NCBI RefSeq assembly: GCF_006345805.1
Contig: NC_043004.1
Coordinates: 105,462,001-105,526,000 of the forward strand
Origin: Octopus sinensis
Lineage: Eukaryota
DNA length: 64,000 nt
Reading direction: 5' to 3'
Shown here: positions 61,486 through 64,000 of the stretch, piece after piece
How the letters are laid out: every line of letters begins with the position of its first letter
Position numbering within the stretch: the first letter of the stretch is position 1
Notes under the pieces: model-generated
Databases searched by the model: none
Seen by the model: the letters and a program-made list of their open reading frames with translations, nothing else
Told to the model about the DNA's origin: nothing
Program-made: the position numbers and the translations under genes

Positions 61486-63077
61486 ATATAGCTGTAAAAC
61501 ATGAAAACCAATTAAAACAGATTGGATTTGAATTGAGAAACAATTAGTCACTCTTCTTGATTTATCATGATTGAAATTGTCATCATTGTGACCATTACCA
61601 TTATCAACATCAGTGGCATCACCATTATCATCAATATTAGCATTGGCATGATTTCATCAAGGTTGTCATTGCCATTGTCATTATAATCATCACCATGACT
61701 TTCTTCGTGTCCTTCTCCTTCCCACCTCCCCTCCTCCCCTTCCTCTTTCCCCATTCTTTCTTTTTCCTCCTCTTCCTCTTCTGCTTATAAATTTGCTTTT
61801 TATTGTTGTTGGTTATGAAACAGCAATTTCACCTCATAATTCCACATCTTGTGGAACATGCTGCCATTTTGCAAGAGTGTGCCAGTGAGACTATGGAGTT
61901 AACGGGTCGTCCAGGTGCCAAGTGAACTAATTAACCACATTTAGAGTCTCTAAACGATCATCAACAGATGTAGGCATAGCCACGTGCATAAGAATTTTGC
62001 TTCATTAACACATGATTCCAAATATAATCCTACAGAAAAACACGTTCGACAAATGTCTTCAACTGTAGTCTTGGATTGCCCAATACTATACAAGTAGAAA
62101 TTACTAAATGGAAACTGTGTGAAGCCTTTAATATATCATCATCATCATCATTTAACATTTATTTTCTATGCTGGCATGTGTTGGACAGTTTGACGGGGGC
62201 TGGAAGCTGTACCAGTATCCATTCTGTGTTTTGACATGGTTTCATCTTTCTTTATTGCCCACACTGTGCTGAATATAGAGGGGATAAACAAGGACAGACA
62301 AACGGATTAAGTCGATTATATCGACCCCAGTGTGTAACTGGTACTTAATTTATCGACCTCGAAAGGATGAAAGGCAAAGTTGATCTCAGCGGAATTTGAA
62401 CTCAGAATGTAACGGCAGATGAAATACCGCTAAGCATTTTGCCCGGCATGCTAACATCTCTGCCATCTCACCTGGTTTCTACAGCTAGATGCCCTTTCTA
62501 ATGCCACCCGCTTTATAGAGTGTACTGGGTGTTTTGTTTTTTATAATGTACCAGCACCAGTGCTTTTGACATGGCACTAGCACCGGTGCATTTAAAGTAG
62601 CACCATCACTGACAAGGACACCAAGCATCTTGCAAGACAAAATGGGAAAAACCCTTCAGCTGGGAAGAGGAACTAGTATTGAGGTGCAGCGGCTTTGTGT
62701 CAGTTGAGGGATTAAAGGGATTATAGAGGGGATAGAGATAAAATAATAAACATTGACTGAGTAAAAGGCTGAATACAAATCCAGTTTATATCATGCATGT
62801 ATGTATGTATGTATGAGTGTGAGCATGCATATGTGTGCATGTGTGTGTGCATGCATGCATGTGTGTGTGCATGCATGCATGTGTGTGTGCATGCATGCAT
62901 GTGTGTATGTATATATGGATGTGTATGTATGCATGTATGTGTGTATGTTAATGTATGTATGTGTGTATGTATGTGTGTGTGTGCATGTGTTCATGCATGC
63001 ATGTATGTGTGCATGCGTGGTGGTTGTGTGTGTCTACGTATATATGTATGTATGTATGGATGTGTGTGTGTGTGTAT

Positions 63078-63145
63078 AAATCCTTAAAATCCTTAAAAAT
63101 GTTTTAGCCCGAAGGCCGCAGCCATGCTGGGGCACCACCGCTGTC
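63078..63145 (-). mobile_element. SINE/LINE-type 3' tail directly fused to the 7SL copy
   Basis: GCGGTGGTGCCCCAGCATGGCTGCGGCCTTCGGGCTAAAACA followed by TTTTAAGGA repeats, homologous to the family A tail GGCGGTGCTCCAGCATGGCCGCAGTCAAATGACTGAAACA. Confidence 0.75.
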
Positions 63146-63148
63146 TTT

Positions 63149-63450
63149 AAAATTAGATTGGTGTTCAGTTGTATCGAACAGGCTGCTAACTGACAACTAT
63201 TCACAGGCGCGATCCCACTACTGCTCGACACGGGGCCTTTTGCCTGCTGCGTTTCCGCCCTGGGCTGAAGCGACCCTCCTTAGACAACCTGGTCCTGATA
63301 AGCTCCCTCTCCAGCACCATATTGATGCCGAGCTTAGCACGGACACCCGATCGCCATAGAAGACCGACTACCAGGACTCCCATCCTCAAACCGGCCAACC
63401 AACCAAGCCTCTGAGTAGCTAGATTACAGGAGCACACCACAACTCCCAGC
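63149..63450 (-). ncRNA. RN7SL: full-length 7SL (SRP) RNA sequence, gene or retrocopy
   Basis: Minus strand GCTGGGAGTTGTGGTGTGCTCCTGTAATCTAGCTACTCAGAGGC...GATCGGGTGTCCGTGCTAAGCTCGGCATCAATATGGTG...GGAG...ACCAGGTTGTCTAAGGAGGG...CCCAGGGCGGAAACGCAGCAGG...CAGTAGTGGGATCGCGCCTGTGAATAG... ends in TTTT. About 302 nt and colinear with metazoan SRP RNA (Alu domain, helix 6, helix 8 SRP54 motif). Confidence 0.93.
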
Positions 63451-63654
63451 ATGTATGTATATGTTGTGTGATTGTGTGTGTGTATGTATGTATGAATGTA
63501 TGTATGTATATGCAGGTGTGACTGTATGGTTAGAAGTTTGCTTTCCAGCCACATGGTTCTGCATTCAGTCCCACTGTGTGGCATCTTGGACAGGTGTCTT
63601 CTTCCATGACCTCAGGCCCCAAAGCTTTGTGAGTGCATTTGCTAGACAGAAACT

Positions 63655-63893
63655 AAGGCGGTGAGCTGGCGGAAACGTTAGCACTCAGGGCGAAATGCTT
63701 AACGGTATTTCGTCTGCCACTACATTCTGAGTTTAAATTCTGCCGAGGTCGACTTTGCCTTTCATCCTTTCAGGGTCGATTAAATAAGTACCAGTTACGC
63801 ACTGGGGTCGATATAATCGACTTAATCCGTTTGTCTGTCCTTGTTTGTCCCCACTGTGTGTAGCCCCTTGTGGGCAGTAAAGAAATAAGAAAC
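63655..63893 (+). mobile_element. SINE family B, full length
   Basis: ggcggtgagctggcggaaacgttagc...gccgaggtcgactttgcctttcatcctttcagggtcgattaaataagtacc...gggcagtaaagaaataag. Confidence 0.88.
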
Positions 63894-64000
63894 TAGAAAA
63901 CACTTACTATGTGTGTGTGTGTGCATGCATGTTTGTTTCCCCCCCACCATTTAATAACTGGTGTAGGTGTGTTTACATCCTTGTAACAGAGTGTTCCGTT

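What the first reader, a model, noticed from the sequence alone, without database searches (positions are those of the whole stretch)
63078..63450. Full-length 7SL RNA fused to a SINE-type 3' stem-loop tail: candidate 7SL-headed SINE or template-switch chimera in a cephalopod
Seen: a complete 7SL of about 302 nt on the minus strand, with no recognisable upstream flank (it abuts a TGTA microsatellite). About 7 nt after its TTTT comes a tail homologous to the family A SINE tail. The tail hairpin is preserved by substitution: family A has CAGTC-AAAT-GACTG, this copy has GGCC-TTCG-GGCT, and a short tandem repeat (TTTTAAGGA) ends it. Known: SINEs borrow LINE 3' tails for retrotransposition, 7SL-derived SINEs (Alu, B1) are taxonomically rare, and U6-L1-type chimeras arise by template switching. 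Inference: this is either a member of a 7SL-headed SINE family or a LINE-made 7SL/tail chimera. I am not aware of either in octopus, but I cannot confirm novelty.
Basis: partly seen in the sequence, partly recalled or inferred. Interest (0 to 1): 0.8.

Follow-up and report, generated by a model that had tools for sequence, protein, structure and literature searches.

The report
7SL RNA copy fused to LINE tail
This is a dead retrocopy of the octopus signal-recognition-particle RNA (7SL) that a LINE reverse transcriptase made by copying its own 3' tail and then continuing on a 7SL RNA; it is one of about a hundred such accidents with 7SL and U6 RNAs in this genome, not a new 7SL-headed SINE family.

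Summary
Window 63450-63153 (-) is a full-length 7SL RNA (Rfam RF00017, 230.6 bits). It is followed by TTTT, a 5-nt linker and a 66-nt tail of two hairpins and a short tandem repeat.

The tail is the true 3' end of a LINE with a reverse-transcriptase ORF. Its core occurs 3,219 times in the genome. In a sample of 30 copies, 12 are cut off exactly where the 7SL is joined.

All 29 dispersed 7SL copies examined carry LINE or SINE sequence right after their T-run, and none of 11 gene-cluster copies does. They carry at least four tail types, full-length or truncated SINEs and different linkers. Tail type does not follow the 7SL tree, and no two 7SL copies share an exact junction.

U6 snRNA shows the same pattern: 49 U6-tail and 26 U6-full-SINE fusions, against 0 in controls.

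The window element is therefore a single LINE-made chimeric retrocopy, most likely by template switching. It lacks the gene's upstream flank. A TTTT terminator also lies between head and tail, so it is probably not mobile.

This kind is known from U6 chimeras with L1, L2 and RTE elements in vertebrates. I found no paper describing it in cephalopods. Verdict: new member of a known kind, moderate interest.

The parts
63153..63450 (-). Full-length 7SL (SRP) RNA copy. It starts at RNA nucleotide 1 and belongs to the variant of the putative gene at G000:C5:125284460 (L008).
   Evidence: Rfam RF00017, 230.6 bits, model 1-299 of 299. It sits in a 97%-supported clade with L008. It has about 7 private substitutions in 300 nt (end branch 0.023).
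63149..63152 (-). TTTT: the U-run at the 3' end of the Pol III transcript. In the DNA it is a Pol III terminator lying between head and tail.
   Evidence: Read directly. In all examined copies, genes and retrocopies alike, the 7SL part ends in a run of 2-14 T.
63144..63148 (-). Linker AAAGA, present in neither the 7SL genes nor the LINE. It is probably untemplated nucleotides or a short oligo(A) on the 7SL RNA.
   Evidence: LINE copies read ...GCTCATT before CAGCGG. Gene copies continue with T-rich flank. Linkers differ in every chimera.
63118..63143 (-). Start of the LINE tail (CAGCGG...) and hairpin 1. Its 5' base is the hot spot where the reverse transcriptase leaves the LINE RNA.
   Evidence: 12 of 30 sampled copies of this tail are truncated here. 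All 4 7SL fusions and about 7 U6 fusions with this tail type join here. Fold, pair counts. Contigs of four sequencing runs stop at 63143/63144.
63106..63117 (-). Hairpin 2: GGCC-TTCG-GGCT (UUCG loop). It is the type-specific stem-loop of this LINE family.
   Evidence: Fold. Compensatory changes between tail types in 3 of 5 pairs. The core pattern occurs 3,219 times in the genome, control 0.
63078..63105 (-). Spacer AAAACA and terminal tandem repeat (TTTTAAGGA, 2.3 copies). The LINE copies carry the 8-nt unit TTTAAGGA.
   Evidence: A hairpin plus an 8-bp terminal microsatellite is the CR1-type tail architecture described in PMC5729268.
63451..63512 (.). 5' flank: TACA/CA microsatellite, part of the insertion target. 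No 7SL promoter-like flank.
   Evidence: Gene copies share a conserved AT-rich upstream flank that is absent here.
62795..63077 (.). 3' flank: CA/TACA/TGCA microsatellite, the same kind of target as the LINE's own copies.
   Evidence: 22 of 30 copies of this LINE tail are followed by an alternating purine/pyrimidine microsatellite, and 5 of 12 tail-only copies have one on both sides.

Best explanation
The element is a bipartite chimeric retrocopy made by the reverse transcriptase of a CR1-like 'stringent' LINE. Shown: the LINE exists, has an RT ORF, and ends in the same two-hairpin tail plus 8-nt repeat. Inferred: the enzyme nicked a TA/CA-type microsatellite and primed on the terminal repeat of a LINE RNA. 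Shown: it copied only the last ~66 nt, the repeat and both hairpins, and left that template at the 5' base of hairpin 1, a hot spot where about 40% of this LINE's own copies also end. Inferred: it added a few untemplated bases (AAAGA in the sense strand) and jumped to the 3' U-run of a 7SL RNA transcribed from an L008-type gene. Shown: it copied the 7SL RNA to its first nucleotide. The product has no upstream promoter flank. A TTTT terminator stands before the tail, so a Pol III transcript from it would lack the tail that the LINE needs. It is therefore a dead-on-arrival pseudogene, roughly 2% diverged. The same reaction produced all other dispersed 7SL copies examined and at least 75 U6 fusions in this genome.
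For: The 7SL part is full-length with RNA-defined ends. The tail core occurs 3,219 times, control 0. In 18 of 30 sampled loci it continues upstream into an ORF with YADD and Pfam RVT_1 (E 2.1e-10); 12 of 30 are tail-only copies cut at CAGCGG. 29 of 29 dispersed 7SL copies carry LINE or SINE sequence directly after the T-run, against 0 of 11 gene-cluster copies. These include three hairpin tail types, a fourth unrelated tail, full-length SINEs joined at their 5' end and 5'-truncated SINEs. Both 7SL gene variants combine with several tails and linkers differ. Tail type needs as many changes on the 7SL tree as it has rows (4/4, 7/7, 6/6), and the window copy's 97% clade holds all three tail types plus gene L008. 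No substitutions are shared by tail type. For U6, which has no internal promoter and cannot be a SINE head, there are 49 U6-tail and 26 U6-full-SINE fusions with the same junction places, controls 0; several coincide with full-length Rfam U6 hits. The insertion context matches the LINE's own. Published precedent: stringent LINEs (L2, RTE) and their SINEs form U6 chimeras only by template switching, with short or no TSDs (PMC4476161).
Against: No clear target-site duplication can be read for the window copy, because both flanks are microsatellite. Across 16 chimeras the flank match is only weakly above shuffled pairings (mean longest match 6.2 versus 5.2 nt, permutation p 0.015). The near-constant junction in the tail is unlike the variable L1 parts of mammalian U6-L1 chimeras. 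It could also come from a pre-cut tail RNA that is ligated to the small RNA. Sequence alone cannot separate template jumping from RNA ligation. The LINE's clade (CR1) rests on tail architecture and a recalled C-terminal motif, not on a phylogeny.
Confidence: 0.8

Rival explanations
1. RNA ligation before reverse transcription. A tail fragment of LINE or SINE RNA, cut at the base of hairpin 1, or a whole SINE RNA, is ligated to the 3' end of 7SL or U6 RNA. The LINE then retrotransposes the hybrid RNA as one template. RtcB ligation has been proposed for U6/L1; that proposal is recalled from the literature, and the abstract mentions RNA ligation as a known mechanism.
For: The junction in the tail is nearly constant. 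Tail-only insertions are common (12 of 30), which would fit a pool of free tail RNA. U6 is the commonest head.
Against: Most junctions carry 1-30 extra, often A-rich, bases that belong to neither partner. This is typical of polymerase jumps and not expected from direct ligation. 7SL is not known to carry the cyclic-phosphate end that U6 has (own knowledge). Fusions to internally truncated SINEs also occur (L017, L026).
Confidence: 0.1
2. Member of a low-copy or nascent 7SL-headed SINE family (SINE1) that re-transposes using the LINE tail.
For: Head plus LINE tail is the SINE architecture. 7SL has internal promoter elements in other animals (own knowledge). A few copies have a broken T-run, for example L002 with TT only. 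Three type-3 copies (L004-L006) have similar junctions.
Against: No two 7SL copies share an exact junction, and the strict pattern finds only 10 fusions genome-wide and the relaxed one 14 true ones. Tails, linkers and head variants are mixed. There is no clustering by tail on the tree and no shared diagnostic change or internal deletion. TTTT lies before the tail in the window copy. The same preferred junctions appear on U6, which cannot drive its own transcription. The structure is not uniform, and uniformity is the published criterion for a SINE family (PMC7245038; PMC4494074).
Confidence: 0.05
3. Two unrelated events: a 7SL gene or plain retrocopy, with a tail-only LINE fragment later inserted beside its T-run.
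For: Tail-only LINE fragments are abundant and insert on their own. The locus is a microsatellite that attracts this LINE.
Against: There is no gene-type upstream flank. 29 of 29 dispersed 7SL copies have LINE or SINE sequence within a few bases of the T-run and in the same orientation, and 0 of 11 genes do. The same holds for 75 U6 copies against 0 reversed-pattern controls. No 'naked' dispersed 7SL retrocopy was seen that could serve as the first step.
Confidence: 0.04

Closest known systems
U6 chimeras with stringent LINEs and their SINEs in vertebrates (U6-L2 and U6-Mon-1 in platypus; U6-L2, U6-RTE and U6-AnolisSINE2 in lizard); Doucet et al. 2015, PMC4476161
   Same: A small Pol III RNA is joined at its 3' end to a short 3' part of a LINE or SINE that needs a specific tail. 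There are no poly(A) forms, only chimeras. TSDs are short or unclear. The LINE ends in a simple repeat.
   Different: The host is a mollusc. 7SL as well as U6 serves as the head. The heads are mostly full-length, whereas platypus U6 parts are mostly 5'-truncated. The junction sits at a discrete hot spot at the base of a two-hairpin module, which is also where about 40% of the LINE's own copies end.
U6/L1 and 7SL/L1 bipartite chimeric retrogenes of mammals (Buzdin 2002; cited in PMC4494074 and PMC2104539)
   Same: A full-length small RNA at the 5' side and the 3' end of a LINE at the 3' side in one orientation, ascribed to template switching during target-primed reverse transcription.
   Different: L1 is a 'relaxed' poly(A)-dependent LINE, its parts in chimeras vary widely in length, and TSDs are clear. 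Here the partner has a structured tail with an 8-nt repeat and the tail part is nearly constant.
7SL-derived SINEs (SINE1): Alu and B1, and SINE1-1_EBu of hagfish (Kojima 2020, PMC7245038)
   Same: 7SL-derived sequence is joined to a retrotransposon-derived 3' part. The hagfish family also uses a non-L1 partner and arose by chimera formation.
   Different: SINE1 families have an internal deletion of the S domain, a uniform structure and many copies. The octopus copies keep the whole 298-nt RNA, are few, and each has its own junction. That paper separates 'chimeric retrocopies of 7SL RNA' from SINEs on exactly these grounds.
CR1-mobilised SINEs born by template switching (TguSINE1 and PittSINE; PMC5729268)
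   Same: The tail has an RT-binding hairpin and an 8-bp terminal microsatellite. Exchange of heads is ascribed to template switching.
   Different: Those products acquired active promoters and amplified. The window element shows no sign of either.

Membership tests
Template-switch chimeric retrocopy (small RNA / LINE 3' end) | The 5' part is a copy of the mature small RNA with RNA-defined ends: it starts at nucleotide 1-3, ends in the U-run and has no gene flanks. | tested here: met
   Rfam 1-299 of 299. Most dispersed copies start at 7SL nucleotides 1-3, a minority are 5'-truncated, and all lack the conserved upstream flank of the gene cluster.
Template-switch chimeric retrocopy (small RNA / LINE 3' end) | The 3' part is the 3' terminus of a LINE or SINE in the same orientation, and many ordinary LINE copies share that terminus. 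| tested here: met
   3,219 copies of the tail core, control 0. 18 of 30 continue into an RT ORF.
Template-switch chimeric retrocopy (small RNA / LINE 3' end) | Independent events: junctions, partners and head variants differ between copies. | tested here: met
   At least four tail types, full and truncated SINEs, variable linkers and two or three 7SL variants. Tail type is scattered on the tree.
Template-switch chimeric retrocopy (small RNA / LINE 3' end) | Other abundant small RNAs form the same fusions. | tested here: met
   49 U6-tail and 26 U6-SINE fusions, controls 0. 5S and other RNAs were not tested.
Template-switch chimeric retrocopy (small RNA / LINE 3' end) | One target-site duplication flanks the whole chimera. 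| tested here: inconclusive
   The window copy lies in a microsatellite. Across 16 copies the signal is weak (6.2 versus 5.2 nt, p 0.015).
SINE1 (7SL-derived SINE family) | Uniform chimeric structure shared by many copies, with a shared junction, internal deletion or diagnostic changes. | tested here: not met
   No two 7SL copies share an exact junction; 10 strict and 14 relaxed pattern matches genome-wide. No shared derived states. Full-length 7SL.
SINE1 (7SL-derived SINE family) | The Pol III transcript includes the tail, so no terminator lies between head and tail. | tested here: not met
   TTTT at 63149-63152 lies between head and tail. Transcription itself could not be tested; no RNA run held the stretch.
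SINE1 (7SL-derived SINE family) | The 3' tail is shared with an autonomous LINE partner. | tested here: met
Functional 7SL (SRP RNA) gene | Full-length, well-folding SRP RNA sequence. | tested here: met
   230.6 bits against a gathering score of 70.
Functional 7SL (SRP RNA) gene | Conserved upstream flank as in the gene cluster on G000 contig C5 (117.01-117.04 Mb) and in L008, L020 and L023. | tested here: not met
   The window has a TACA/CA microsatellite instead of the shared AT-rich flank.
CR1-clade LINE (the partner element) | Reverse transcriptase ORF. | tested here: met
   Pfam RVT_1, E 2.1e-10, on L031:425-799.
CR1-clade LINE (the partner element) | 3' UTR with an RT-binding hairpin and an 8-bp terminal microsatellite. 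| tested here: met
   Two hairpins with covariation. (TTTAAGGA)n in LINE copies. Feature as described in PMC5729268.
CR1-clade LINE (the partner element) | Phylogenetic placement of the RT within the CR1 clade. | not tested
   Only the C-terminal 350 aa were in hand, and I ran no reference LINE comparison (no LINE reference library among the tools; the capped protein-homology search was not spent on this). The resemblance of the C-terminal motif to CR1 is recalled, not computed.

The most novel reading that the evidence does not exclude
One or more of these fusions is a nascent 7SL-headed SINE in a mollusc. The candidates are those whose T-run was shortened below a working terminator, for example the type-1 copy at G000:C24:16959797-16960165. 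Such a copy would be transcribed through the tail and could re-transpose. This would be a third independent birth of SINE1, after Euarchontoglires and hagfish, caught at the one-copy stage.
Probability: 0.05. Interest if true: 0.7.

Novelty: new member of a known kind. Interest (0 to 1): 0.35.

Why it matters
Stringent LINEs can only move RNAs that carry their tail, so fusion of a Pol III RNA to a LINE tail is the presumed first step in the birth of every SINE. The octopus genome is about 12% SINE (PMC13282606). It turns out to hold about a hundred such first-step products with 7SL and U6, all joined at one structurally defined point, the base of a two-hairpin module of about 60 nt. This marks out the minimal tail that this reverse transcriptase copies before leaving its template. 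It also gives a natural series for asking why some fusions (tRNA-like heads) became huge families while 7SL and U6 fusions did not. For annotation, dispersed 7SL and U6 hits in cephalopod genomes should be read as chimeric pseudogenes, not as genes or new SINE classes.

Tried and rejected
1. 7SL-headed SINE family: rejected on copy number, unique junctions, mixed tails and the tree.
2. Real gene with a neighbouring SINE remnant: rejected by the missing upstream flank and the 29/29 versus 0/11 association.
3. TSD search: only a weak signal, uninformative for the window copy.
4. ARAGORN on the window found no tRNA, so I do not call the family A SINE head tRNA-derived.
I did not try another tool for them. 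The U6 fusions were read only from the matched strings that the pattern search prints, so their 5' ends and flanks are unchecked, except where they coincide with full-length Rfam U6 hits.
6. Sequencing runs. No listed holder is on record as RNA. Laid contigs of four runs cover the tail hundreds of times and stop at 63143/63144. Only run X6 (organism D, possibly the source of the assembly) has contigs over the junction bins and the 7SL 3' part. This proves no absence elsewhere, so the age and species range of the insertion stay open.
8. The large protein searches were not used; the LINE clade is left as 'CR1-like'.
9. Paper searches for 7SL or U6 chimeras in cephalopods found none. The O. vulgaris repeat paper lists small 'SINE/U' and 'SINE/5S' classes that may include such fusions.

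Full report
**The observation**

The Rfam scan of the whole window gives one hit above threshold. It is Metazoa_SRP (RF00017), covering model positions 1-299 of 299 at 63450..63153 on the minus strand, 230.6 bits against a gathering score of 70.

Read on the minus strand, the 7SL is followed by:
- TTTT (63152-63149);
- the five bases AAAGA (63148-63144);
- a 66-nt tail (63143-63078), which begins CAGCGGTGGTGCC and ends in 2.3 copies of TTTTAAGGA.

Both flanks are TACA/CA microsatellite. The 16-mer at the start of the tail matches 15 further places in the window with up to 3 mismatches, against 0.21 expected by chance. Most of these are the 3' ends of the abundant 'family A' SINE.

**The tail structure**

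The tail folds into two adjacent hairpins. I aligned 17 tails of different types and counted pairs:
- 91.7% of cells form standard pairs, against 21-47% when the partners are slid by 1-3 columns.
- Three of the five pairs of the second hairpin change on both sides (CAGTC/GACTG, CAGCT/AGCTG, GGCC/GGCT).

The 'hairpin preserved by substitution' is real.

**What the tail is**

The core of this tail type, the end of hairpin 1 plus the GGCC-TTCG-GGCT hairpin, occurs 3,219 times in the source genome with at most one mismatch. The reversed control pattern occurs 0 times. I sampled 30 loci in positional order on contig C1:
- In 18, the tail continues upstream into a long ORF with a YADD motif. Pfam calls it RVT_1 (E 2.1e-10), and the ORF stops about 45 nt before the tail.
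- The other 12 are 'tail-only' copies whose 5' end lies at (C)AGCGGTGG, the very place where the 7SL is attached in the window.

So the tail is the true 3' end of a LINE family, not a diverged SINE tail. The window's tail differs by one base in the 51 aligned bases from LINE copy L031. The LINE copies end in (TTTAAGGA)n. A hairpin plus an 8-bp terminal microsatellite is the tail architecture described for CR1 elements (PMC5729268). I call the LINE CR1-like on that basis, but I did not place its RT in a phylogeny.

Of the 30 tail copies, 22 are followed by an alternating purine/pyrimidine microsatellite. Five of the 12 tail-only copies have one on both sides. This matches the insertion context in the window.

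**The other 7SL copies**

The genome (2.7 Gb; the window is G000:C8:105462001-105526000) holds at least 40 7SL copies. They fall into two sharply separated classes.

*Gene copies.* Eleven copies share a conserved AT-rich upstream flank and end in a T-run followed by unrelated sequence. Most are clustered at C5:117.01-117.04 Mb; the others (L008, L020, L023) also lie on C5. These are the genes.

*Dispersed copies.* All 29 copies elsewhere lack that flank. Most start at 7SL nucleotides 1-3; a minority are 5'-truncated. Every one carries LINE- or SINE-derived sequence within a few bases of its T-run:
- four have the window's tail type;
- seven have the family A tail;
- six have a third tail type (CAGCTCATGAGCTG hairpin);
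- three have an unrelated tail with an (ATG)n repeat;
- seven have a full-length SINE (six family A, one of another SINE family) joined at its own 5' end. Ordinary family A copies start at about the same bases;
- two have a 5'-truncated SINE.

Both main 7SL gene variants occur with several tail types, and the linker between T-run and tail differs from copy to copy. The exact junction of the window occurs once in the genome. A strict 7SL-end/tail pattern finds 10 loci, and a relaxed one finds 14 true loci; both controls are 0.

On a tree of the 7SL parts, tail type is fully scattered: 4 changes for 4 rows, 7 for 7, and 6 for 6. The window copy sits in a 97%-supported clade that holds the putative gene L008 and copies with all three tail types. 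No substitution is shared by copies of one tail type.

**Generality**

U6 snRNA depends on an external promoter and so cannot head a SINE. It shows the same pattern:
- 49 loci where the U6 3' end and T-run are followed by a short linker and one of the same tails, joined at the same place (about 28 of the third type, 9 family A, 7 of the window's type);
- 26 loci where U6 is followed by a full-length family A SINE.

Both controls are 0. Several of these coincide with full-length (1-105) Rfam U6 hits.

**Mechanism**

This pattern matches the bipartite chimeric retrocopies known from mammals (U6/L1). It is closer still to the U6 chimeras formed by stringent LINEs and their SINEs in platypus and lizard. 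Those are ascribed to template switching and have short or no TSDs (PMC4476161).

The most likely course has these steps:
1. The LINE enzyme primes on the terminal repeat of a LINE RNA at a nicked microsatellite.
2. It copies the repeat and the two hairpins.
3. It leaves the template at the base of hairpin 1.
4. It adds a few bases.
5. It continues on the U-run of a 7SL RNA to that RNA's 5' end.

Shown here are the partner LINE, the hot spot, the RNA-defined ends of the head and the independence of the events. Priming, untemplated addition and the jump itself are inferred.

A rival that sequence alone cannot exclude is ligation of a pre-cut tail RNA to the small RNA before reverse transcription. 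The frequent extra bases at junctions argue against it.

TSDs are not decisive. The window copy sits in a microsatellite, and over 16 copies the flank match is only slightly above shuffled pairings.

**Is it a SINE?**

Published criteria separate SINE families from sums of independent chimeric retrocopies. A SINE family has a uniform structure, a shared internal deletion or evidence of master copies. Independent chimeras are expected when many LINE copies share the same terminus (PMC7245038; PMC4494074). Here every criterion points to independent retrocopies. The window copy also has TTTT between head and tail, so a Pol III transcript would stop before the tail. It has no gene-type upstream flank.

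**Age and distribution**

The 7SL part has about 2.3% private change. With the rate used for O. vulgaris repeats (JC 0.065 is about 18 My; PMC13282606), this is on the order of 6 My. That figure is a rough inference.

Contigs of four public runs from four organism labels cover the tail hundreds of times and mostly stop at 63143/63144. Only one run, possibly the source of the assembly, has contigs over the junction bins. No run is on record as RNA. These data settle neither age nor expression.

**Novelty**

I found no paper on 7SL or U6 chimeras in cephalopods. The kind is well known in vertebrates and fungi, so this is a new member of a known kind. Two features go beyond the published cases: the use of 7SL beside U6, and the discrete hot spot at the base of a two-hairpin module, which also accounts for about 40% of the LINE's own copies.

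**Limits**

- The LINE clade is not established.

Noticed in passing
L031-L060 (G000 contig C1, sampled loci of the type-1 tail): About 40% (12 of 30) of this LINE's copies are only the last ~60 nt, cut at the base of the first tail hairpin. Several of these lie inside TA microsatellites, including the internal microsatellite of a family A SINE (L035). This is an unusually sharp 5'-truncation hot spot for a LINE.
   Followed up: partly
G000:C1:141834633-141953129: A tandem array of at least 25 identical-scoring full-length U6 genes, spaced about 1.1-2.5 kb apart. It is probably the main U6 gene cluster.
   Followed up: no
G000:C5:117012983-117040831 (L010-L015, L021, L022, L076): A cluster of at least 9 7SL genes in both orientations with a shared upstream and downstream flank, plus one 5'-truncated fragment (L076). 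L008, L020 and L023 are further single genes on the same contig.
   Followed up: partly
L013, L077, L079 (G000:C17:6063363; C15:36307907 and 36309057): 7SL copies joined to a fourth, unrelated tail (a hairpin around CCATGCTAGCATGG followed by an (ATG)n repeat). This implies that a second LINE lineage also makes 7SL chimeras. The two C15 copies are near-identical and 1.15 kb apart, so they are a local duplication.
   Followed up: no
G000:C6:47004478 and 47005194; C14:7253078 and 7253165: Pairs of U6-tail fusions with identical junctions 87-716 bp apart. They are local tandem duplications of chimeras rather than separate insertions, so the count of 49 slightly overstates independent events.
   Followed up: no
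window 63540-63900 (minus strand upstream of the 7SL): Two further SINE-like repeats lie next to the 7SL copy. One is of the family that begins GGCGGCGAGCTGGCAGAA, here in the opposite orientation to the 7SL copy; the same family is fused to 7SL in L078.
   Followed up: no
window, 15 sites listed: The window carries about a dozen family A SINE copies, each with an internal TA/TG microsatellite, and several other SINE families that share the same two-hairpin tail module with different second-hairpin sequences. ARAGORN recognises no tRNA in any of them.
   Followed up: partly
7SL and U6 junctions: Linkers of 7SL chimeras are mostly A-rich (AAAG, AAAAT, up to 30 nt of A/G-rich sequence in L018), and the SINE and type-3 tails begin with AAAGG or AAATGG. 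This may reflect pairing of the cDNA's terminal T's with a short oligo(A) on the acceptor RNA. The idea is untested.
   Followed up: no
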